DNA of 63,654 nucleotides, counting the filler, from Lenisia limosa (taxonomy: Eukaryota > Protista > Breviatea), in assembly GCA_001655205.1 (NCBI GenBank). It is 7 parts of 7 records of this genome, joined end to end, with 100 filler letters (N's around TTAATTAATTAA, not from the genome) between each part and the next. Parts side by side here need not be neighbours in the genome. Positions count along the whole stretch, not along the records: positions 1 to 19,609 come from LPNZ01010137.1; 6 more parts are not named here. The stretch is one strand, 5' to 3'. Positions 1 to 19,609 of the stretch are shown here, one piece after another (position 1 is the stretch's first letter; each line of letters starts with the position of its first letter). Below the pieces are notes generated by a model that saw only the letters and a program-made list of their open reading frames with translations, had not been told where the DNA came from and did no database searches. Position numbers and translations under genes: made by a program.

Positions 1-3000
1 CAATTACCTCTACCAATCAGCAGACGGTTCTCATGTCTTTGGCATTGCATACGGCATGGCGTACCAAGGGCGTGGGGGGGGGGGCAATGCTTTTATAATC
101 GTAATAATGTGAACAGGTTTTTCTCTATTTTGTGTTCACATTGCAATATTGATATTGTAGAAAACGCAAACATCATTTGGGACACAGCCACGGTGGCGTC
201 AGCTGACAAGTGGACTGGCCAGTGGATCTGTAAACAAGCTACATGGTTTATTGCTGCTCGACACGACCTCCGCAGGGCCGAATACCCTGATACTGACAGC
301 CTCTTTCCGGTGCATGGTGACGTGTGGAGCAAGGCGTCTGAGTCGTCGTTTAACTTGAAGTGGGTGGGGCTATGATTGAAAGGTTCTTTGATTTTTATGA
401 GAGACCAAATTAATATAATAGTAAAGTATATGATATGATATTATATCTATATGCTCAAGGGCCAAAATTATGTCATTAATTATTTACGGTCGCCAAATCA
501 GCTATTCTCCTTCAAAACAGTGTTATATTTCTGAGATATTCACACTTTATTTGTTTTTGAAGGGAATCAAAGAAAAAAAAATTACCTATATAATTTTTCG
601 GTTTTTTTTTTTGCAAGNNNNNNNNNNNNNNNNNNNNNNNNNNNNNNNNNNNNNNNNNNNNNNNNNNNNNNNNNNNNNNNNNNNNNNNNNNNNNNNNNNN
701 NNNNNNNNNNNNNNNNNNNNNNNNNNNNNNNNNNNTTGCATTTTTCTCATATTATATGTTCTTTTTCACGAGTAAAATTGTTGTGAAGTTGACCGTATCA
801 TGAAAAAGAGAGTCACAGAAAATTGAATTAGCGACAATAATTCGAATTAACGACATAGTTTAGGACATATACAATTATGTAATAGCTATATCATATCGAT
901 AGGTAAGATATATGTACTATATATTATGATATATTTGAACCCTGCAGTTGGGCAGCCCAAAACTGTCCTGAAGACCTCGACACCATCGCGTATTTCTACA
1001 GAAACTCCATCTATGTTGACACGTTTGCGGGGGGGGGGGGGANNNNNNNNNNNNNNNNNNNNNNNNNNNNNNNNNNNNNNNNNNNNNNNNNNNNNNNNNN
1101 NNNNNNNNNNNNNNNNNNNNNNNNNNNNNNNNNNNNNNNNNNNNNNNNNNNNNNNNNNNNNNNGGTCTCAGAAAAGTAAAAACAATTCACAAACCGAAGC
1201 AAACAAAAGAAACATATGTATACTACATGTATATGGACAAGAAACATGTCAGATAGACAGATAGACAAGACACGGAAGAGCTAAGAAACCATAACTTTGA
1301 CAATCTCATTCAAGGATTTGGATACCCAAGTTCGGGACCAGTTTTCAGATGGGAGGGGAAGGCAGATGGAAGCGGTGTAGAGACGACCAATGCAGAGGCG
1401 TGACGCCCAGACAGATTTCTTGTTGCATTTGTATCGCTGAAGAAAATCAATACACTTCAACACAAAGAAGACAACTATCTACTATTTTTATTTTTATCTT
1501 TCGGTTGAAGGGCTTGTAGTGGAAGGCCCAGAAAGACAGTAAGAAAAACGATAAAGTGATTGATAAAAGTGATAAACCAGTGGCTTACCTAACAGAAAGG
1601 TTAAGGGCCCGTAGACAGTCCAGCAGGTGGAGTGGAGCCTTCGAATAAAGCCTCGACAACCTTGAGGATAGTAAAAAAGTAAAATAGATGCCAAATTTTA
1701 AACAAAGAAACATTACCCAGCGTACCAACAACTCCAACTCTGATGGCCCCTGATGCACTGTCCACTTGAAATCTCGTTGGCAGGGTTGAAGAGGACAGCT
1801 AATAATGAACATGAATTGGTAGCAGCAGTGCACGCCCTCACTTGGCAACGCGGCGTTGGATCGTCGACATCGACGGGAGACCGGGGTACATTTCGGTGAA
1901 AAGGCCGTAGTGCCATGTCCATGGGGGGAAACCAGAAGGAAACCCCATTTGCACTCCTCATTTGTTTGCAGTAGTTGCGAGGCCCCTTCCGTGAGTGCCG
2001 GAACTCCATGTTCAGCTTTCCTCGGGCTACAGCCTGCTACATTTGGAGAGCATCAGCGGACCAACACCCAACATCCACGACAGCAGCGGGATACTTATTA
2101 TTGTTATCAACAAGGAAAGACAACAGAAGACAGTTTCTAACAGCTACGAACGAGTAAGGGAAAAGAAAGGAGAAAAAAAAAAAAAAAAAAAANNNNNNNN
2201 NNNNNNNNNNNNNNNNNNNNNNNNNNNNNNNNNNNNNNNNNNNNNNNNNNNNNNNNNNTTTTTGAGACTGAAGGACCATTCTCGGGTATGTGGCTAGGTA
2301 TGGCTGTCTTTTTGAGATGCGCACCCACAGAGTAGTTGATACTCTTTTCAGATTTCAAACTGTTTTTAGTCTTGGGGAGTTTCAATTCACTTCGCCTTTG
2401 ACCCATTTGTAGGAAGTACGACTTGTTGTTCCCAATGGCTAATGCGAATGCCCCAATTTCCGGCCTGGCAGCCTCAATGCAGGTTCTTCTCGAGCCTTAC
2501 CCAGGTGGGATCAATGGATTCACTTTGGGCACTATGGGATTTATCAACATATGAAAGCTTCATTTTTAAAGACTTATATCAAAGAATTCTGATTTTCTGA
2601 ATTTTCTTGTTTGAAATTCATTCATTCAAAATCTATCATAAAAAATTACAGAACTGCTTCTCACCATCCCATATTCCTCGCCGTAAAGCATGCTTTTCAC
2701 CTCTCCAGACTATCCGACTTTTGAGAACGGTCCGCTTGGATTAACAACGGTATTCACTTCAGCTGACGACGCTGAGCGGGCGGCTTTAAAGTTAAACGGT
2801 TGGGACTGTTTCAAAAGAAAGTACTATATGATATGTGATGTGATATTGCATATCGATATAGTCATAAAGTAATAATTTTTCTATTGTAATACACTATACA
2901 GTAGTCTGCAACTTGGGAAAAATGTTGTCAAAACATGCACACCAATTACCAATTTTATCTGACACAATGAACACTAACACTCTCTCCACAGTAAAACAGC

Positions 3001-6000
3001 ATTTTTCATATCCATTAGGAAAATGATTTCCACAATAATACCAACTGGTGATGGTTTTTTCGTCTCACCCCCATCAGGAGCCGGCGCGCCCGTTGAGAAC
3101 TTTTCAGTAATGTGGCGTGCCAAAGGTGACGCGCGTGGCGTGGATGGCGCAACCACAGCCAAAATGCACATGCTGTCTTCGTACTCCAGCTACGGCTCTC
3201 AGGTGGGGGCGTTTCATTTCAAAGAGACACAGAATGTATCTTTGTGGTGCTGAAGCGAGTGGTTTAATATTCAATGGTCCACAAGCAATATTGTGGTTCT
3301 TGAGACGGTAGTTAAATTAGACGAGTATTAAATGCTTTTGATATGGTATGCATTTGTGTTTGTACAGGCAAACACTGTGATATGATATAAATAAGCTGAG
3401 AAACACCTTATATTTTATTTGATAATATGATAGTGAGTATTTGTTTATGCAAGATTCCATGTGTTTTATTTTCATAACCAACGTAGGTTTTCTCTCGCTT
3501 CACAGGGTCGGACTATATTCAGGTTTGCATATATTATACATAGTATATATATATATTACTATAAGTGGCAGTGATTAGACTGACACTATAGACATGTGCA
3601 CAGAACTACACTACTTACTTAGGGTGTTGCTCAATTCAAGGAACTTCGTATGGTTTCATGGAACAGTTATATTATACCTCAGCTTTTCAGAGTTGTAAGA
3701 CAATGATTGGATGAATTATATCTATACTACAACGAACATCTTGTATCAGGGTGATGGTATGGATAGCTTTGACCAAACTTTATCTTGTTGTCTCATCACA
3801 CACCATTAACAGCTTCAGATGGGGAGGCAAAGACGAATGGCACCATATGGCGATTGTATTGGATTCTGACGCCGGCCGCCTCAGATGCTACCTCAATGGA
3901 ATCGTGGGCTTTGACTTGGGGTGATCCATCTTTTGTTTGACGCATTCCTTTATTTGACGGTTTTGGTCAATTCCCATTACCTTGGCAGTATATTTCCGAC
4001 GGAAATGTTGGTGTTGGAGCGACGGTCCCGGACCAAAGTCTTGTTATCGGTTCTGGATTCACGGGACAGCTTTCTGACTACAAGTATGTCAGTAGTCTTT
4101 TTTGATAGCACTGCGTTTGGTTGTAGATCTAACGTACTATCAGGGTGTTCAATGAGGTCCTCTCGTCCGAGTCAATCAAAGCTATTTATGACGCTGAACC
4201 GTCCATTCCAGAACCTGTTGGGGAGGGGGCTTGTATGTATTAAATTCAGTTGGACAAGGGAGATATTAACTTGCTTGTATGGTTCATCAATATACTTGGT
4301 TTTATGGACCTCTTTTGTTTTATTTCCTCGGCTGTCCTTAAAAAAAACATCTCATACTCCGTAGGAACCAGTAGTGATGAAGAGCACTCTCCCCGCAGCG
4401 GTGCTGTCTGCAGCCTCAACGTGGGGGGCATGGTATAGTATGTTGTTTACAGGGTGATTTTGTCTTTTCATGTAGTGGTGTTCATTATGGCAAAGGACAA
4501 GGAGTTATAGCAAGATTGTGACTGTCTCATTGCCGCAGAATCAAGGCGTGTGTCACAAGCTTTACAGGAGACTTTGATGCAAGTGGCAATTTGATTCCTG
4601 GTGGGGGGAGGGGTGGATTTTAGTGACACAACTGGGACAGTCACAGACCACATATCGCTCCGCCCTGAGAATATTAAAGTAGATATCATATCATATTTTT
4701 GGGTACTTACTTTTTTAGAAATTAATTGTGATGCGAGTGTCACGGTTTCGTCACCTTGTAGCGTATCAGCTAATACCAAGGGCCTCAAATTTGAGGGACT
4801 GAAGAAGTGGGGGTTAGGTAATTTAATCTTGTACTATGTAGACACCAGCGTAATTGCATTTAGCTGTACTTATGATGGTCTTGTTGCATCCCTCTCAGTG
4901 AGCAAATCAGCACCCAAGGTCGTCTCATGGTAAGATGTGATACTATATCATATGTATGATATCTGACAACAACTCTTCTTCTGTTTGGTGTAATCGATTT
5001 CCTTATAATAGTGGTAGTTCCAAAAGTACAAACATCGCTATTTCAGACATACAGGTGTCTGCTGAAGATGATAATACAATGTATTCTCACGAGCAAGGTT
5101 GATTGATGGACACGATTTCCCCCTCTACCAAGCCCCTCTTGGTGCCACCTTATTTGGCATTGGATTGGAGGTTGGTAACATGCTTTTGAGCCTTGTGGTT
5201 TGAAATGATGCCACGTAGGACTATTTTAATATTCTTCCTGTTTTTTTTTAACCGTGGTTTTGAATTTCCTCTCCTCCTCCGCCTCAATCAAGTTGATTCA
5301 TGGCTTCATTCGCATTTCATTCGCCAGCATCCTTCAGAGTTTATGGGTGCTCCCCGCTGGGTGTTCCCCGCATCAGGATCTACTTACTTCAAGTTGGTGA
5401 GGAGTGTAACATTACTGCAATGTATATGTACATATCATAGTATATTATATTTGTCTCCACAATACATTCGTCTTTTAACTCCCGTCGCAGGACTGGGTGG
5501 GACTATCCCGAAGCTCTACACTTGACTTTCCTTTCCGCCCCCTTCTACGTCGGTAAGCTAAGCCGGCAGCGATGGTTCAGTTCATTTCTGAATTTGCGTA
5601 ATACAAAACACGCATTCTTGTCACTTCAATTCACTCTGATAAAGTGAAAGGGCTTCACTCTCTGTAGCCAACCATCAGCACCTGGACCAGAACAGTTTCC
5701 AGCTCCACTACAAGGAGCCACTTTTCCTCGATAGTGGTGGGGGGTTTGGCGTGCTGATGTGTTTGATATTTTAAGAACTGGTTTCAATGAAGTATGTGCT
5801 GACATTGTCAGGAAGCTACAACCCCACGAACTATGGCAGTGACCATTGGCACAACTACTACCGCCGAAGTGTTGCACACAACACCATCGTTGTGCGCAAC
5901 GGACAAGATGACGTGGGGGGGGGGATTTCCACTTTAATGGGGCTCGTCTTGATATTGAAGTTAATTTATTCTAATATATTGGGGTACCAGATTTGGTTTA

Positions 6001-9000
6001 ATACTACAGGTGCTGAGGACAACTCAGGACGGGGGACAACGAGACTGTTTCTCCAAAACCCTGGAGGATATCAAACCAGGAGGTTTGCTTTTTTGGAATC
6101 TTTTTAAAAAATAAAAAAATTCGGTACCTGTACTTGACTTTGTTGACAAACCAGGAGACTGTATTCTTGAGGGACTGGTCCAGACATTTATTGGGTATGA
6201 CTTCAGCCATTCAAGAGGCGAAGCCGGCATGTGAGTGGAAATGGGTTGCACAGGGGTTTCTTCCTTGAGATAATTGATATGATATGTTCTGTCATATTTC
6301 TAATGCTGAGAGGCAGCCATTCAGTGATTCTGAATCTAGTTCGTGGATCTCTGGGATTACCATTTCAAATATCTGCATTAGCAGCTCCGTGACTTTCTAG
6401 GGCATACAAGCCTGAAGTTTTGCGAAGATTCGGGAGAGACGTGGTGCTGTTCCATAAAGATGGTTGGTCATTGCTGTCTGCTATCATAAAGATGGTTGGT
6501 CATTGCTGTCTGCTATCATAAAGATGGTTGGTCATTGCTGTCTGCTAAAGATGGTTGGTCATTGCTGTCTGCTAAAGATGGTTGGTCATTGCTTCTGGGG
6601 GTCATAGGGAGTCTTATTTACATGATGCATCTCACCCACTCCAGGATTATTATTCACTCCTCACGCAGACGAATTCAGCGCCACCAAGCCAGGCCTGGTC
6701 CTTCTCTACGACTCCGTCACCGCCAACGCCACCGACTCGCCGATTCAACTCCTGCACACCAACTTCCAACCAATAAAGGTCAGACTTTGAGGGGGGGGGG
6801 TGCTCGGAATATGGAAATCTCTCACTGCGTGTCATATTTATTGTTTCAAAATTGCACAATATGAGTTGTTATTTTATATGTCCCTACAATATGAGTTCTG
6901 TACCATGTGCATCTGATATTCTATTAGCAAATCAGAATTAGCTGTATCTATATTAAAATATTACAGATAATAGAAATTTGGAAACCAGTTCTCACCCCTG
7001 AAGGTTGATGACGCACACTATACCTTCACTACAACTCAGGTAGGGGGGTCACATCTCCATCTGTACACGCACACATTCAATGCTTGAAAGGGGCAGGATT
7101 TGACAGTCCAGAGCAAGGTGAACATTCGACATTGGGCTGCCGGCGGGACGACCCTGTCCTCCATTGTGGAGTCAAGACGGTTCTGGAGTGACGGCACGGA
7201 CTGGAATTACTCCGATCCTGGAGGAGGAGAGATAGCGGAAGCAGGTAACGTAGGCTGGGCACCATATCATTCACCGATATTATGAAACTGTTGGATAGGC
7301 GTTGTTATTAAATAGAACGGAAGGATTGTTTTTACTGGCAAAAGATCCTTCAATTCTGAAGAAATGCAGTTTACCATATCGCCTGCATATTTTCTGGACT
7401 CACAATTGCAGTATCGGCTTGAGACGACCTTCTCCTCCGACTCGACTGTCACTTCCGCTCTTACTGCCATCACTGTACTTCCGGATGCTGCGGCGGACGA
7501 CTGGGAGGTGGGATCTTTGTTTTGATATCAGACTAAGTGTTATTCTGTGGCTTCGCATTTGACTGGACAGATTGCAGCTTTGGAGTGTTCATCGACAAAT
7601 ATATATTCTGCTAAAGTTTCCTACAAAACTGGTGGGTACGTCTCCATTGTAACTTGAATATGGGGTTTTTTTGAACTGTCAAGATAGAACAAGAGTAATA
7701 CCGGTTCAAAAGAATGAAAGTTTTTTATTCTTTTCTTTCTAGCCTAACCTGATTTAGACTTGCCATATTTGGTAGTTTTCAACAGCCACCGCCACAACGA
7801 AACTGTCACAGAGTCTATATTAATCGCAACTGGGTAAGTCTTGTTCATGCTCTTAATAATACCGAATCACACCAGTAATTATTTTTACTATTCCTGCAGA
7901 GGAATGAACAGCTCTTTTAAAAATGATGAAAGTGATCCAGCCAGCTGTTGCTATTTCTTTCTCGAAGCTCACCTTTCAGATCAATGAAAACGTTCAATCT
8001 GGCTCTTTTCGGTTTCGGTTTGTGGGTTTTCTGATTTGAAACGCTGAAGTATCTGGTCCTGTGTCCTTTCATTGAACCACCTCTTCTACTCGCCCCAAAG
8101 GGTTATGAACTTGTGCCTGAATAAATGATTTTAGGTCAAAACACTAGAAACAATATAAGCAATGAGAAATAAAAAAATAAGGTAGTATCTGACCGAAGCC
8201 TTCCACACCATCACGCTTATAGGATTATGGTATAATGTTAATTCACCCAATCGTTTGCCTGACAACTCTGTTTACACAGCTTTCTGCGTTCCTCCCCAGC
8301 ATACAAAAACAGAGAGCGAAGATATATCATACAAGACACTATTTTGATGTGATATATTTTTTTTAGGAAATGAACAACACAACTTGTGGAATTTATTCGA
8401 CTGGTGTTCCAGTTTTGACTGTTTAGAGTCTTCTGTTTCGATCTGCCACCCTAATGAGTCGGGGACCCTGACTGTCAAAATGGGCTTTGAGGATGACAGT
8501 GGGCTGGAGGATGCGTTTATGTTGAACATACAAGTATCTTTTATTAAAATGGATATTTGCGGCAGAGGGGAGGTCCAATCAAGTCTTTCTAATGGCCGAG
8601 TTAATATTGTGTTTTCAGTATCAGTGTACGTATAATTAATTCAGCTTTCCCATGCAAGTCATTTTCTTCTGAAGATGCAGTTTCTACTGTTATTCCATGT
8701 AAGAGGGATTTCTTTCTCACAGTTCAAGAGAATCACATCCACAAAAAAACATGAATAAAATGGTTCATTTTTCTGCTTTTTTCGGGGAACATAGTGTAAT
8801 GGGGGTCTACATGATGATGGGTTGTACCAAGGGTATAGTCGCAATTTCCGCGAAAATTATCGATATTTGGGGAAAATATTGCATCGGAAATGAAATAGAG
8901 GGTTCAGCTTTCGGTTATGGTCGGTCATACTCTGGGGGTCATCGCGCATCCCGTCTGCTCTGCGAACGCAAGCCCCAGAAGGCCTTGGTAGTACTGACGT

Positions 9001-9388
9001 CGGAGACGAGTCGGGAAGGCAGGGTACTGTAGTTTTGTTTTCGTTTCTTTTTTATGCAATTTCTTTTTGCCCTTCCCTTCCTCCCTTCCTGACCCCTTCA
9101 GCTAATATTCATTCATGGTACGACTTCGGGGAATCGGAGTCTTCTGTCGACAAGACGAATGCGGATGATGAGTCGTTTTCGCCTGTCTACGGTTCGGAAT
9201 ATGTCTTCATTTATCCTGCACTGTGACATATGACTGACTCATTTCATACTGTTTTGTCAGCTTCACCTCTATCAAGGTATCCTATCACTTTGACCCTCGC
9301 AGTAGTAGTTCCTGTTCTGGCTGTTGGTGCACTTGCAGGTGCCGGGATGTTCTTCATGAGAAAGAGCAAAAAGTCCGGAGCAATGTAG
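1..9388 (+). CDS. Multi-exon heparinase II/III-like polysaccharide lyase (PL21/HepII-like) with internal LamG domain and C-terminal TM anchor; 5' end lies outside the window
   Basis: Spliced exons give ...RRAEYPDTDSLFPVHGDV (~260-330); TGWDYPEALHLTF (~5492); NHQHLDQNSFQLHYKEPLFLDSG-SY...YGSDHWHNYYRRSVAHNTIVV (5668-5912); AYKPEVLRRFGRDVVLF; PGLVLLYDSV...LLHTNFQP; FWSDGTDWN. These are colinear with Pedobacter HepII motifs as I recall them (RRPDG..GGDV, RTGW, NHQHQD, RTIAHN). The last exon reads ITLTLAVVVPVLAVGALAGAGMFFMRKSKKSGAM* with TAG at 9386-9388. Whether all exons form one gene is unproven. Confidence 0.75.
3813..4220 (+). CDS. LamG / concanavalin A-like lectin domain exons within the lyase locus
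   Basis: WHHMAIVLDSDAGRLRCYLNG ... LVIGSGFTGQLSDY ... IRVFNEVLSSESIKAIY matches the LamG-3 pattern WHHVAV..DG..LYVNG / F.G.IDEVRIYNRALS. Confidence 0.8.
6453..6593 (+). repeat. 27/32-bp tandem repeat x5 that duplicates an exon end and 5' splice site
   Basis: Unit AAAGATG|GTTGGTCATTGCTGTCTGCT(ATCAT) is visible five times. Confidence 0.95.
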
Positions 9389-9799
9389 GGGGGGTGGAGT
9401 TGAATTGTATCTTCTCTTCAAAACGAGAGACTCCTCTTGTGGTGAAGATTAGATTGATACAAATCTGTACACACAAAGCTCCCGAATTAGCTTCTTACTT
9501 CTCATAGGAAGTCACAGGAAATGGCCAATCGGTTTTAGTTCTAATATTATTGTTTTTTTTGTTTTGTTTGGGGGTGAGTCGGGGTATTAGTTGTATTTCT
9601 TTTGAACTGGGAGTATTATTGATTTAGTTTTCTATTGCTACTCATTTACCTCACTTTAAAAAGGTTGAATCCTCTATGAAAGATAATACATTTGGAACAC
9701 AATCCAAAGGACAAACATACTGCTATACATGAAAGAAGATAGCTACCTGACTGTCTCTCACATCTTGCTTTTTCAGCGCATCTTTAGAATGAGGCGCTC

Positions 9800-12170
9800 T
9801 TATATTCTGTGGAAAGAGTCCACCATAATCTTGAGGTGCCGCAGCACGTCTGAGGCAGAAAGGGACACTGGGTGTTCGTGTGCCGCCATGTATGAGGAAT
9901 ATCTGGGAGGTCTGTCAAAGGAAACTAAACTGTCCTGATTATTTGAGCTATTGGTGAAACTGTTCTGAAAACAAGCAAAAATATCATAATTATTAGGCCT
10001 CCGTGCAATATTGAAAAATATTTCCTAATTTGAAGTGGGCCGTATTGTAATGGGAATGCCATTTCAGACACTAAATATTTTGTTGAAAGAATTATTTCAT
10101 ATAAAATATGTGGCATGAAAGGGATTTTTAACAACTGCCATGTCCATTACCTTAGTAACGAGGGGCCCAATGTGCAAACGTCGTGAGTGGACTGTCCGTG
10201 ACCACTCCCTGCCATAACACCAACAAGGAGGTCGCCTGATAGTAAAAGATATATCTAAGCACATCCTCATTTGGGGAATTATTTCAATTTGTCTTTCTGT
10301 CATCTTAGTATGCCATTACTGAACAACTTGAAAAGAACAGACACTCCTATTTTCCACTTCACAGCCACTCCTATGTTCCAGATGCGACAAGACAGCCCCT
10401 ACCTAATCCGGAGCAACGTTTTCGTGTTCCTGGGATGCTAAGCTTCAAATTCTACATCAGTAAGAGGGGTAAGGGCGAAGCCTTTGTCCTAGTTTTAGCT
10501 ACTGGAAAGAAACTGCAAAATAAGCTGAAATCTTCGCATCAACCACTAACTATAAGATCCCGGCCGGGAAGTGAGACTTCATCCACGTTGCCCTTGGCCA
10601 CTACGCAGCAGCCAAAATGCTAGGTTTGGTAAGATCCATCAATGGAATGTCATCATAAATACTGAAATTCCCAACAGTATAGTGGGAGCATCATCACAAC
10701 ACTTATGCACATTACGCACCCTTGCAACAGCCTCGGTCTCTTGCACCAAGTTGGGGAACCGCTTGAAAACACCTGATTAGTGTTAGTGAGGATATCAGAT
10801 CATATTTATCAACCAAGACTCCAATCAGTTCTCTCTTTGATCTGATCCAAACTGAGGGAAAACAAATAAACAGGTCAATGATTTCAGCTGAAATTCAGTT
10901 CTTGAGTTCTTACCAAGCATTTCACCTCGATTTGGTGTCATAATCACTTTCTCATGCAGGCTTTTATGGGACTGAACTCTGAAGGCTGGTGAAACCCTCA
11001 AAACAATAGGACAGCGAGCAAATATCCAAATATATACTGAGCTTGTGAGCAAGACAGCTCAGACTTTCAAACCTGACGTAATCTGCGTCAAATATGACGG
11101 GTATGTTATGTTTGAGAAGTACCTCCGTGGCCTCATGAACCTCCTATACAATTAGACTTCTCCATATTACTTTATATATCTAGATTTTTTCCTTGCCCAA
11201 GTCACCTTCAACACTTCGTCGGACATCATGCCAAGGCCAGGGCCCACAATAGCAAATGTGGCTCTTGGTACAAAGGGCTGTGAACTACGCATCGTTTGTT
11301 GGGGTACATATTCACCCAGGAAATTCCCCGAAAGTTGTTGATAAAAGCTGCTTTTTTAACACCACTAAACCAACTGGAATGAGGTGAGAGGCAAAACACA
11401 GAGGTCTGGCGAAAGGGCCTTGAGGGAAGACAATGCCAGGGTAGATGGGGTGAAAACATGGCAAATCTCCGCGCCTAAAGATTGCTTGATGCTGTGGCAG
11501 GGAAAGTAGCAGTACGACAACTCTTTTAAGAAGACATTTTTTAAGAAAGACAAAATCTCAATATTTGGCGACTATCCAGACTTCTTCAATTTCCCAACTA
11601 CCTGAAATGAGAGCAGCTGTACCAGCAAAGTACGGGGCCCCTAAGAAAAATGAACAGGCAATAATAAAACACTTGACGAAAAGTTTCAGTAACTTGTAAT
11701 AACAGTTCGATTAAAATAGCCTACCAGTGAAGCTGTCCGAACCTCCAATGATCACCACGCGGCCTAATAAATCAGATTCGCATTGAGAGATACCAAAGAG
11801 TGACGTTAAACCCGTCTAAGCAGCCTATAGCCCTTACCTCCAGCTCCTTTTCGAGAGGACACTTCCTTCTTTTTCATCAAAAAAGCCACAGCGTTTTGAT
11901 CATGATGTGTTAAGACACTGGTGGACAGGAGCTTGAAGAGTTCTGCGTGTCAGATGTATACACAACAAGGGGGAAGGTCTATGATAGATTGATATGATGC
12001 TGATATCAACCCATAACCCGGACTCGGCCAGACTTCACCCACGCTGAATTCCAGTTGTTGCCAGTTTCTCTTGTGTCTGTTCCCCTAGCAATTTCAGAGA
12101 CGCCGTCCTAAAGAGTACCGAGTCATTGGGAATGGTGTTTGGTTTCCTTCAGCCGACAAGATACGGGGGA
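9800..12170 (-). CDS. NAXD: ATP-dependent NAD(P)H-hydrate dehydratase (CARKD/YjeF-C), multi-exon; start uncertain
   Basis: Exons give GRVVIIGGSDSFTG-GAPYFAGTAAL, GAEICHVF...KALSPDLCVLP, IVGPGLG, IPVIFDAD, VIMTPNRGEM, CVVAKG, RKRCSGLG-GDLLVG, and a last exon ending VDSFHRI* (stop 9800-9802). Confidence 0.9.
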
Positions 12171-19135: not shown

Positions 19136-19350
19136 CTTGGTCTGCTGATACTATTAACAACCAAATTTAGGCGACGTTACCCATAGAGGGGTCCAAAGAA
19201 GAGTGCTCAACCTGGGTATAGACTCAAGATTGTTGTCTTGCTTTCTGTGTAAGCTACTTTCTATTTTTCTGAACCTTTGTAAACATCCGTCATCACTGAA
19301 TGTTTCTCTTTTCTTCACCCAATTTCAACATAAATCCTCCAATTTCAAGA

Positions 19351-19609
19351 TTGTTTTTCTAGGTGCGTGGCTCGCGCGCCATGCGTGAGCCAGGCTTCCG
19401 CCTGTCTTACGCTGGTTGCCGCCTCGCCGGTAGCCGCCCAGTCCGACGTGACCTGGACTGGCTTCGACAGCCTCCATGCCGGCATCAACGCTCTTGGCGT
19501 GGCCGTGGTTGTCAACGACGCCAACGGAAACGAGATTGTGGTCACCTGCGCCGACTACCCGGTTGTTGAGATCTTTGCCACCAACTCGGCCGGAGCCAAG
19601 ATGGCAGTG
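19351..19609 (+). CDS. GC-rich exon, filamin/Ig-like repeat candidate, truncated by linker gap
   Basis: SPVAAQSDVTWTGFDSLHAGINALGVAVVVNDANGNEI resembles the filamin-type pattern S.V.G.GL..A.AG....F.V...DA.GN. Confidence 0.4.

What the first reader, a model, noticed from the sequence alone, without database searches (positions are those of the whole stretch)
1..9388. Split heparinase II-like lyase: LamG-containing insert between the alpha-toroid and beta catalytic domains, anchored by a C-terminal TM
Seen: exons at 1-1400 resemble the end of the HepII alpha/alpha domain (GIAYGMAY; RR..PD.....GDV), and exons at 5330-7500 resemble the central/C-terminal beta domains, including the NHQHLD His motif. 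About 3.5 kb of extra exons with a clear LamG domain lies between them. The final exon encodes a hydrophobic helix and a short basic tail. Known: in bacterial HepII/III (PL12/PL21) these domains are adjacent and form the active-site cleft together, and the enzymes are soluble or periplasmic. Inference: this is a cell-surface glycosaminoglycan/sulfated-polysaccharide lyase with an in-built lectin module, an architecture I do not recognise as described in eukaryotes.
Basis: partly seen in the sequence, partly recalled or inferred. Interest (0 to 1): 0.78.

Follow-up and report, generated by a model that had tools for sequence, protein, structure and literature searches.

The report
Eukaryotic heparinase-II-like gene with LamG insert
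An intron-rich, expressed gene of a eukaryote encodes a relative of bacterial heparinase II, a sugar-chain-cutting enzyme, whose two catalytic halves are separated by an extra ~300-residue segment containing a probable lectin-like domain, and which probably ends in a membrane anchor; I found this layout in none of about 140 bacterial relatives.

Summary
A second, gap-free assembly (L001) closes the three N gaps (really 79, 51 and 40 nt, non-coding in appearance). It adds 5.4 kb upstream, with a start codon and signal peptide. A profile of 43 bacterial "heparinase II/III family" proteins hits ten exons. All are on the + strand, in strict order (profile 29 to 632), and all score above about 1,190 decoys. 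Every conserved residue I could check is present: the HepII Tyr257 and His406 equivalents, the HxH..D..AHN motif and DGGQ. Profile positions 371 to 445 span 66-103 residues in all 46 relatives but window 345-5489 here. That is about 300 extra residues, holding a weakly supported LamG domain, placed in the alpha-beta linker. PolyA RNA contigs prove GT-AG splicing of LamG, beta-domain and stalk exons. Not shown: RNA continuity over 3850-6680, the last junction to the transmembrane exon, and any activity. The joined protein was not searched or folded, by rule. Verdict: a real new domain arrangement of a known enzyme kind, probably of bacterial origin.

The parts
1..71 (+). Alpha-domain exon (i). 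It begins 9 nt upstream of the window (L001:5355). It encodes ..SADGSHVFGIAYGMAYQG, which holds the equivalent of the HepII catalytic Tyr257.
   Evidence: Family HMM positions 297-319, 4.3 bits, above all decoys. tblastn to P0027 residues 291-308. P0027 Y304 aligns to HepII Tyr257. The donor GTGGGG at 72 fits the reading frame.
161..359 (+). Alpha-domain exon (ii): NIIWDTAT..RHDLRRAEYPDTDSLFPVHGDVW.. It holds the invariant family G-D of the 'FPxxGD' motif.
   Evidence: Family HMM positions 324-371, 9.2 bits, i-E 0.02. The donor at 360 scores 8.6 bits. The exhaustive 1.8-billion-protein search found only its own unspliced ORF.
618..735 (.). Assembly gap 1 (N). Gaps 2 and 3 lie at 1043-1163 and 2193-2258.
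   Evidence: L001 reads through all three with 79, 51 and 40 nt. The flanks are 99.8-100% identical and the gap sequence shows no coding look.
948..1022 (+). Inferred exon (iii), WAAQNCPEDLDTIAYFYRNSIYVD, taken as one of the last toroid helices.
   Evidence: It is in frame with exons (ii) and 2413-2504 through GT-AG sites. There is no profile hit. The position matches helices at 375-410 of the P0027 model, which is an inference.
1164..2192 (.). Transposon- or retroposon-like insert in intron 1023-2412.
   Evidence: It has a poly(A) tail and inverted 14-mers at both flanks. Its A-rich composition differs from the surroundings. No Pfam hit.
2413..2504 (+). Inferred exon KYDLLFPMANANAPISGLAASMQVLLEPYP, taken as the last helix and the start of the interdomain linker.
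   Evidence: The frame fits on both sides, with donor GTGGGA and an acceptor carrying the TGAC motif. RNA contig 9 must extend about 122 nt upstream of 2709, by arithmetic.
2709..4216 (+). LamG-like block. Exons: 2709-2820, 3019-3202, 3487-3522, 3592-3647, 3819-3903 (or -3917), 3989-4083 and 4144-4216.
   Evidence: RNA contig 9 joins 3202>3487, 3522>3592 and 3647>3819 with GT..AG. Pfam Laminin_G_3 E 8.9e-4 on 3715-3921. The end motif 'FTGQLSDYKVFNEVLSSESIKAIY' was matched by eye. The other borders come from frame logic and my own gene-model script.
4365..5097 (+). Unresolved stretch of small candidate exons, about 90 residues, between the LamG block and the beta domain.
   Evidence: This rests only on my own splice and codon model. 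There is no RNA contig and no homology here.
5338..7507 (+). Central and C-terminal beta domains. Exons: 5338-5392, 5491-5552, 5668-5736 (NHQHLD..LFLDSG), 5812-5912 (..NYYRRSVAHNT..), 6010-6082 (QDGGQR), 6155-6230, 6401-6462, 6645-6778, 7004-7039, 7112-7249 and 7412-7507.
   Evidence: Family HMM hits at positions 445-464, 463-489 (37 bits), 488-514 (44 bits), 527-554, 577-599 and 602-632. PDB HepII. Pfam Hepar_II_III_C. NCBIfam HepB. RNA joints 6778>7004, 7039>7112 and 7249>7412.
7571..9191 (+). Ser/Thr/acid-rich stalk exons: 7571-7631 (inferred), 7776-7833, 7980-8017, 8427-8498, 8645-8698 and 9102-9191.
   Evidence: RNA contig 12 joins ..7833>7980, 8017>8427, 8498>8645 and 8698>9102, and ends at 9182. 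The frame chain is open and in frame with the last exon.
9303..9388 (+). Probable terminal exon: a transmembrane helix plus a short basic tail and a stop codon.
   Evidence: Translation and Kyte-Doolittle mean of 1.77 over 19 residues. Acceptor 7.5 bits (97th percentile) with the TTTGAC motif. Donor at 9192 only 1.6 bits. Not covered by RNA contigs.
8917..9035 (+). 5S rRNA gene copy inside the RNA-verified intron 8699-9101. It is not part of the protein.
   Evidence: Rfam RF00001, 61.3 bits. T-runs follow it. Contig depth about 1,240 against about 35 for the flanks.

Best explanation
One nuclear gene of a eukaryote runs from an ATG 2.0 kb upstream of the window (L001:3335) to the stop at window 9388. 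My model has about 40 small exons and about 1,035-1,100 codons.

It encodes, in order:
- a signal peptide;
- an (alpha/alpha)-toroid;
- about 300 inserted residues containing a probable LamG/ConA-like beta-sandwich;
- the central beta-sheet domain with the catalytic and metal-binding motif;
- a C-terminal beta domain;
- a Ser/Thr/acid-rich stalk;
- probably a single transmembrane helix with a short basic tail.

The enzyme core belongs to the heparinase II (PL21-type) lineage. Its nearest detectable relatives are bacterial 'heparinase II/III family' proteins (Massilia, Duganella, Verrucomicrobiota and others).

Shown: homology and colinearity of both halves; presence of the catalytic Tyr and His406 equivalents and of the HxH..D..AHN motif (HepII His408/Asp425/His451 positions; their zinc-ligand role is from my memory of the HepII structure papers); the extra segment sits where relatives have a 66-103 residue junction between the last helices and the first strands; splicing and polyA expression of three blocks of exons.

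Inferred: the toroid and beta domain still close around one cleft. The inserted module hangs from the interdomain linker and binds or positions an acidic polysaccharide. The catalytic part faces the outside of the cell or the lumen of the secretory pathway (type I topology). There it cleaves uronic-acid polysaccharides by beta-elimination (my odds about 55%) or, like the DS-epimerases of the same fold, epimerises them (about 20%). The gene probably entered this lineage from bacteria long ago and then gained introns, the insert and the anchor.
For: Gaps and upstream sequence:
- L001 closes the gaps and supplies the upstream part with ATG and MTPLTKIIGLLLLGGLLPSFCLAS.

Colinear profile hits:
- With the 853-state family profile, the ten best of 671 hits are all + strand, inside the gene and in strict order (positions 29-48, 205-242, 297-319, 324-371, 445-464, 463-489, 488-514, 527-554, 577-599, 602-632), at 4.3-44 bits.
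- The best of 526 off-gene or minus-strand decoys and of 665 reversed decoys scores 1.2 bits.

Link to HepII:
- Family member P0027 matches PDB heparinase II at E 5e-52.
- The catalytic exons hit HepII and HepB directly.
- Active-site residues His202, Tyr257 and His406 are taken from PMC10656541 and PMC12088678.

Conserved residues:
- Of the 19 invariant family columns, 17 fall inside exon alignments I could inspect, and all 17 are matched there. G483 (our LFLDS|G) is completed only by the inferred splice 5736>5812. A573 is matched.

The insert:
- The junction between profile positions 371 and 445 is 66-103 residues in all 46 relatives. Here it spans window 345-5489.
- In the P0027 model (pLDDT 83) the helices end at 405-423 and the strands start at 427.

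Expression and genomic context:
- RNA contigs give ten GT..AG joints on the + strand.
- Contig 9 (536 nt) has about 418 nt 5' of position 3487. That is more than LamG exons A and B together (296 nt), so LamG is joined to further upstream exons.
- My own dynamic-programming gene-model script finds an open chain from the ATG to the transmembrane exon.
- A Nop14 gene lies directly upstream.
Against: - No RNA contig covers 3850-6680, 7495-7810 or 9183-9399, so LamG-to-beta continuity and the transmembrane junction are not observed.
- The donor before the transmembrane exon is weak (1.6 bits). A model ending at the TGA at 9224-9226 scores only 4 bits less.
- LamG has a single sub-threshold Pfam hit and no other support.
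- The His202 equivalent ('KGHDR', L001 ~4745-4760) aligns at only -2.9 bits, although in the right order.
- Exons (iii), 2413-2504 and those in 4365-5097 have no homology or RNA support.
- The gene-model script was trained on this same gene, so its score is not independent.
- The whole protein was never searched or folded (rule).
- No activity data exist.
Confidence: 0.72

Rival explanations
1. There are two or more separate genes on the same strand. One is an upstream 'toroid + LamG' secreted protein. The other is a downstream 'beta domain + stalk (+TM)' protein.
For: No RNA contig bridges 3850-6680. The exons in 4365-5097 are only model guesses.
Against: - The catalytic residues are split between the two halves: Tyr257-type in exon (i), His406-type in 5668-5736.
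- No start codon or signal peptide was seen before 5338.
- An open, in-frame GT-AG chain exists.
- The exon and intron style is the same throughout.
Confidence: 0.1
2. The gene has the same structure, but the protein is secreted rather than membrane-anchored. The open reading frame ends at the TGA at 9224-9226, and the hydrophobic 9303-9388 frame is not used.
For: RNA contig 12 stops at 9182. The donor at 9192 is weak (GTTCGG, 1.6 bits, 67th percentile). The alternative terminal exon 9102-9226 scores within 4 bits.
Against: - The acceptor at 9302 is strong and carries the genome's TGAC-type motif.
- The frame fits with exactly one carried base.
- The exon encodes a clean 19-residue hydrophobic helix followed by RKSKK and a stop.
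Confidence: 0.28
3. The architecture is the same, but the enzyme is a polymer-level uronate C5-epimerase (DS-epimerase-like) or a non-catalytic polysaccharide receptor, not a lyase.
For: - DS-epi1 has the same fold, the same His/Tyr/His catalytic set and a metal site, and is a membrane protein of the secretory pathway (PMC8006597).
- PMC11848413 says multicellular eukaryotes generally use hydrolases, not lyases, on such glycans.
Against: - The residues at the metal positions are the HepII type (His/Asp/His), not the DS-epi1 type (His452/Glu470/Asn481).
- The catalytic exons hit HepII/HepB, and no DS-epimerase chain appears in PDB at E up to 10.
- Sequence alone cannot separate the two chemistries.
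Confidence: 0.25
4. It is a decaying relic of a bacterial transfer, or bacterial contamination of the assembly.
For: All detectable relatives are bacterial. No eukaryotic relative was found.
Against: - Many GT-AG introns and spliced polyA RNA.
- A Nop14 neighbour on the same contig.
- Single-copy depth equal to the flanks.
- An open chain with all inspected invariant residues kept.
Confidence: 0.04

Closest known systems
Heparinase II (HepB) of Pedobacter heparinus, CAZy PL21 (PDB 2FUQ/3E7J)
   Same: - The (alpha/alpha)-toroid followed by a beta-sandwich, in the same order.
- The NHQH..D..AHN motif. This covers His406 and the His408/Asp425/His451 positions; their zinc-ligand role is from my memory of Shaya et al. 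2006.
- The Tyr257-type 'G..Y' motif, DGGQR, and the C-terminal 'RFW..NY..G.YR.E' pattern (last item by eye).
- Direct exon hits, and E 5e-52 through the intermediate P0027.
   Different: - HepII is a soluble periplasmic bacterial protein of 772 residues with adjacent domains.
- Here about 300 residues are inserted at about HepII residues 364-373, and there is a stalk and a probable membrane anchor.
- A profile of 88 close HepII homologues recognises only the two catalytic exons, so this is not a close PL21 member.
Uncharacterised bacterial 'heparinase II/III family' clade (e.g. P0008 Massilia, P0013 Duganella, P0027, metagenome L123:379-3345)
   Same: The best sequence relatives: 33-45% identity over the catalytic exons and ten colinear profile hits across both domains. 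All inspected invariant residues are shared.
   Different: - These are bacterial, without introns, and have no insert at profile positions 371-445.
- Their own variable site is elsewhere (positions 54-130). It carries CBM_4_9 in P0034 and Laminin_G_3 in P0023.
- That accessory domain shows no similarity to the eukaryotic insert.
Dermatan sulfate epimerases DS-epi1/2 (metazoan)
   Same: The same fold and catalytic His/Tyr/His logic, in a membrane-bound protein of the secretory pathway with a lumenal catalytic domain. The DS-epi1 paper explicitly raises an evolutionary link to bacterial lyases (PMC8006597).
   Different: - DS-epi has two C-terminal transmembrane helices, a His/Glu/Asn metal site and no LamG insert.
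- No sequence match from our catalytic exons.
Other toroid + beta-sheet lyases (PL12, PL15, PL17, PL33, PL35, PL39; ulvan lyase Uly1040, PDB 9VTK)
   Same: The shared fold and the 'Y..D...NYYR...AHNT' stretch (Uly1040 E 0.063; loci L122, L125).
   Different: These are more distant than the HepII-type clade, all are bacterial, and their domains are adjacent.

Membership tests
Heparinase II-type lyases (Pfam Hepar_II_III_C; NCBIfam HepB; CAZy PL21 and relatives) | Beta-sheet domain with the catalytic His and the H-x-H ... D ... A-H-N motif | tested here: met
   - Exon 5668-5736 against HepII in PDB: E 1.1e-3.
- NCBIfam HepB: E 2.9e-6 and 0.021, colinear.
- Pfam PF07940: E 3.7e-4.
- Family HMM: 37 and 44 bits.
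- The residue mapping to His406/His408/Asp425/His451 comes from the printed alignments. The role of His406 is from PMC10656541. The zinc-ligand role is from memory.
Heparinase II-type lyases | N-terminal (alpha/alpha) toroid carrying the catalytic Tyr (HepII Tyr257) | tested here: met
   Four colinear profile hits in the N-terminal half, at positions 29-48, 205-242, 297-319 and 324-371. GIAY aligns to P0027 Y304, which aligns to HepII Tyr257.
Heparinase II-type lyases | Second base His (HepII His202) in the toroid | tested here: inconclusive
   'VYVTKGHDR' aligns to the near-invariant family 'G-H' at positions 257-258. The order is right, but the score is only -2.9 bits.
Heparinase II-type lyases | Toroid and beta domain directly adjacent (short junction) | tested here: not met
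   The junction is 66-103 residues in 46 relatives. Here about 300 extra residues lie in it (window 345-5489).
Heparinase II-type lyases | Whole-protein score above the curated family cut-off; CAZy/dbCAN family call | not tested
   Single exons stay below the whole-protein cut-offs.
Heparinase II-type lyases | Beta-elimination activity on a uronic-acid polysaccharide | not testable with these tools
   This needs a biochemical assay.
LamG / concanavalin-A-like lectin domain (Pfam Laminin_G_3) | Profile match at or above the gathering score | tested here: inconclusive
   One exon gives 19.9 bits, E 8.9e-4, against a cut-off of 27.6. The other LamG exons gave nothing in Pfam, NCBIfam, PDB or the ESM Atlas.
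Dermatan sulfate epimerase family | Sequence similarity to DS-epi1/2 and the His/Glu/Asn metal site | tested here: not met
   No DS-epimerase chain appears among the PDB hits of the catalytic exons at E up to 10. The residues at the metal positions are His/Asp/His.
Type I single-pass membrane protein | N-terminal signal peptide plus one C-terminal transmembrane helix in the same transcript | tested here: inconclusive
   The signal-peptide-like start and the hydrophobic last exon were seen by translation and hydropathy. No dedicated predictor was run. The junction 9191>9303 is not covered by RNA.

The most novel reading that the evidence does not exclude
A bacterial heparinase-II-type gene was taken up by a eukaryotic lineage. 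It was domesticated into a membrane-anchored, lectin-equipped enzyme that remodels or builds the host's own acidic glycans. This would be an independent, still HepII-like (His/Asp/His metal site) counterpart of the step that may have produced the animal DS-epimerases. It would bear directly on the open question raised in the DS-epi1 structure paper about the lyase-epimerase link.
Probability: 0.15. Interest if true: 0.8.

Novelty: new variant of a known kind. Interest (0 to 1): 0.6.

Why it matters
Toroid-plus-beta-sheet uronate lyases are regarded as microbial tools. Eukaryotes are said to use hydrolases on these glycans, and to have only the related epimerases (PMC11848413, PMC8006597).

An expressed, intron-rich eukaryotic member with the catalytic set apparently intact would extend where this chemistry occurs. 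So would a domain inserted in the interdomain linker and a probable membrane anchor.

It would also give a natural test of whether the active-site cleft tolerates a module in the hinge. And it would offer a candidate intermediate for the lyase-epimerase relationship. The enzyme could also have a new substrate preference set by the inserted module.

Tried and rejected
Single-exon searches that gave nothing:
- Pfam, PDB, NCBIfam and ESM Atlas on alpha-domain exons, most beta-domain exons and most LamG exons.
- Word search with LamG exon B: nothing. The length window excludes longer proteins.
- Exhaustive search with exon (ii): only its own unspliced ORF, plus three repeat-protein artefacts.
- The search for related loci with exon (ii) in bacterial genomes and in metagenomes: nothing.

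Profiles that did not help:
- A profile of 88 close HepII (PL21) homologues recognised only the two catalytic exons. These were selected through the motif itself, so the profile is biased towards it.
- A profile of the bacterial accessory insert (positions 54-130) does not match our LamG exons.
- A search seeded with the LamG region of P0023 found no relatives from which to build a LamG profile.

My own errors, corrected by RNA:
- The hand-drawn exons 3623-3694, 6974-7039, 7091-7249, 7316-7507 and 8367-8533 were wrong.
- The first run of my gene-model script over-called exons inside the transposon-like insert and the 5S gene.

Other points:
- Bacterial contamination is rejected on introns, polyA RNA and the Nop14 neighbour.
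- DS-epimerase membership is rejected on sequence and on the residues at the metal positions.
Full report
**Nature of the sequence and the gaps**

The window is about 40% G+C with no long open frames, only short stop-free pieces on the + strand.

The exhaustive protein search with the longest alpha-side exon returned one true hit, P0001. It is an unspliced ORF of the same genome. Looking up its contig gave L001, an independent ENA assembly contig of 11,801 nt without N.

blastn shows these correspondences:
- L001 5364-5980 = window 1-617
- L001 6060-6366 = window 736-1042
- L001 6418-7446 = window 1164-2192
- L001 7487-11801 = window 2259-6573

Identity is 99.8-100%. The three gaps are therefore really 79, 51 and 40 nt. 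Their sequence is T-rich or low-complexity and holds no exon-like frame. The flanks are continuous.

L001 also adds 5.4 kb upstream of the window. It holds the 3' part of a Nop14 gene (three colinear Pfam hits). About 400 nt further on there is an ATG followed by MTPLTKIIGLLLLGGLLPSFCLAS, a signal-peptide-like start.

**RNA evidence**

One polyA RNA run of the same study holds four contigs on window 3400-9399. All joints are GT..AG on the + strand:
- 3202>3487, 3522>3592, 3647>3819 (LamG block)
- 6778>7004, 7039>7112, 7249>7412 (beta domains)
- 7833>7980, 8017>8427, 8498>8645, 8698>9102 (stalk)

These corrected several of my hand-drawn exons.

Contig 9 is 536 nt long. About 418 nt of it lie 5' of position 3487, more than the two upstream LamG exons together (296 nt). 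It must therefore continue into exons upstream of 2709. I could not see that part, because only one read-laying run is allowed.

Nothing covers 3850-6680, 7495-7810 or 9183-9399.

Depth in the DNA run is single-copy (about 35) across the gene, except in intronic repeats.

**Beta half**

- The exon 5668-5736 (ANHQHLDQNSFQLHYKEPLFLDS) matches heparinase II in PDB at chain 379-406 (E 1.1e-3) and NCBIfam HepB (E 2.9e-6).
- The next exon, 5812-5912 (..YGSDHWHNYYRRSVAHNT..), continues colinearly.
- From the printed alignments, the conserved residues correspond to HepII His406, His408, Asp425 and His451. His202, Tyr257 and His406 are the published active-site residues (PMC10656541, PMC12088678). The zinc-ligand role of the other three is from my memory of the HepII structure papers.

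**Getting relatives without typing protein sequence**

I turned residues shared in tool alignments into degenerate DNA patterns.

- The first pattern fetched 120 bacterial HepII-type loci. Their profile saw only the two catalytic exons, so this gene is not a close PL21 member.
- The second pattern found L123 in a metagenome. It encodes a 989-residue protein much closer at the catalytic exons.
- The word search seeded with L123 gave 46 bacterial 'heparinase II/III family' proteins.

**The decisive test**

I built a profile of 43 of these proteins (853 positions). I ran it against every stop-free piece of both strands of L001 plus the window.

The ten best hits all lie on the + strand, inside the gene, and in strict order:

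| Sequence | Profile positions | Motif |
|---|---|---|
| L001 3696-3755 | 29-48 | HPRL |
| L001 4498-4608 | 205-242 | the 'YDW' helix |
| L001 5362 to window 67 | 297-319 | DG..G.aYG |
| window 169-345 | 324-371 | FPxxGD |
| window 5489-5548 | 445-464 | |
| window 5658-5738 | 463-489 | |
| window 5808-5894 | 488-514 | |
| window 6016-6087 | 527-554 | DGGQR |
| window 6396-6464 | 577-599 | |
| window 6686-6775 | 602-632 | |

Scores are 4.3-44 bits. The best of 526 other-strand or off-gene hits scores 1.2 bits, and so does the best of 665 reversed-sequence hits.

Family member P0027 matches PDB heparinase II at E 5e-52. Its Tyr304 aligns with HepII Tyr257 and with the first Y of our GIAY.

Of the 19 invariant family columns, 17 fall in exon alignments I could read, and all 17 are kept.

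**The insert**

Between profile positions 371 and 445 every one of the 46 relatives has 66-103 residues. In the P0027 model (mean pLDDT 83) this stretch contains the last three helices (375-410), a coil, and the first strands from 427.

In our gene the same interval runs from window 345 to 5489. Frame-consistent GT-AG exons at 948-1022 and 2413-2504 (56 residues) plausibly supply those last helices. The exon 5338-5392 (..APRWVFPASGSTYF) supplies the first strand.

Everything between is extra: 2709-4216 plus the unresolved 4365-5097, about 300 residues.

The bacterial family has its own insertion hot-spot elsewhere, at positions 54-130. It carries CBM_4_9 or Laminin_G_3, and that module is unrelated to ours.

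**LamG**

- Only exon 3819-3917 (..EWHHMAIVLDSDAGRLRCYLNG..) hits Pfam Laminin_G_3 (E 8.9e-4, 19.9 bits, below the cut-off).
- After about 44 Pfam pieces tested in total, this is suggestive, not proof.
- The following exons read like the usual end of such domains (by eye).
- Other tools gave nothing.

I rate LamG/ConA-like as probable.

**3' end**

RNA contig 12 gives an open frame through a Ser/Thr/acid-rich stalk up to 9182. The hydrophobic last exon (9303-9388) fits the frame with one carried base. Its acceptor is strong, but the only compatible donor, at 9192, is weak. A stop at 9224-9226 is the alternative end. My odds for the anchor are about 70%.

**Gene model**

I wrote a splice and codon dynamic-programming script, trained on the confirmed introns and exons. 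It finds a complete open chain from the ATG to the transmembrane exon, with 39-45 exons and 1,035-1,100 residues. It is not independent evidence, and several stretches remain uncertain (L001 3740-5350; window 4240-5330).

**Interpretation**

This is a new domain arrangement of a known enzyme kind, in a eukaryote. All detectable relatives are bacterial. No eukaryotic relative was found in the searches I could run.

An old transfer from bacteria, followed by intron gain, is the simplest history, but it is an inference. Whether the protein cuts or epimerises, and on what substrate, cannot be told from sequence.

Noticed in passing
window 8917-9035 (+): A complete 5S rRNA gene (Rfam, 61 bits) followed by T-runs lies inside the RNA-verified intron 8699-9101, on the same strand as the host gene. 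Contig depth there is about 1,240 against about 35 nearby, so it is one copy of a dispersed or multi-copy 5S family.
   Followed up: partly
window 8000-8400: The intron 8018-8426 holds a very high-copy repeat. Depth in the DNA run is 3,600-11,000, with many loose ends and rearranged joints.
   Followed up: no
window 1164-2192 (L001 6418-7446): A ~1 kb insert ends in a long poly(A) run and is flanked by inverted near-identical 14-mers. It is retroposon- or transposon-like and explains the unusually long 1.4 kb intron.
   Followed up: partly
window 6445-6597: An intronic tandem repeat, period about 32 nt, about 5 copies. The independent contig L001 ends inside it.
   Followed up: no
17 introns across the gene: The splice signals are unusual. 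Nine of 17 donors start GTGGG or GTAGG. Most acceptors have TGAC or TCAC 8-14 nt before the AG. RNA-verified introns are as short as 69-72 nt.
   Followed up: partly
L001 734-2950 (+), upstream of the window: A Nop14 gene (three colinear Pfam exon hits) ends about 400 nt before the start codon of the lyase-like gene. This is ordinary eukaryotic nuclear context.
   Followed up: partly
window 19334-19609 (+): An open frame with a signal-peptide-like start (..ACLTLVAASPVAAQ..) runs off the end of the piece. No Pfam hit.
   Followed up: no
P0023, P0034, P0037, P0039 (bacterial relatives): The bacterial family has an insertion hot-spot right after the N-terminal HPRL segment (profile positions 54-130, 0-646 residues). 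It carries CBM_4_9 or Laminin_G_3, so accessory sugar-binding modules were added to this scaffold at least twice, at different sites.
   Followed up: partly
window 1027-1042, 72-84, 5913-5925: Long poly-G runs sit next to an assembly gap and at several donors. L001 confirms those it covers, so they are real sequence rather than only sequencing artefacts.
   Followed up: partly
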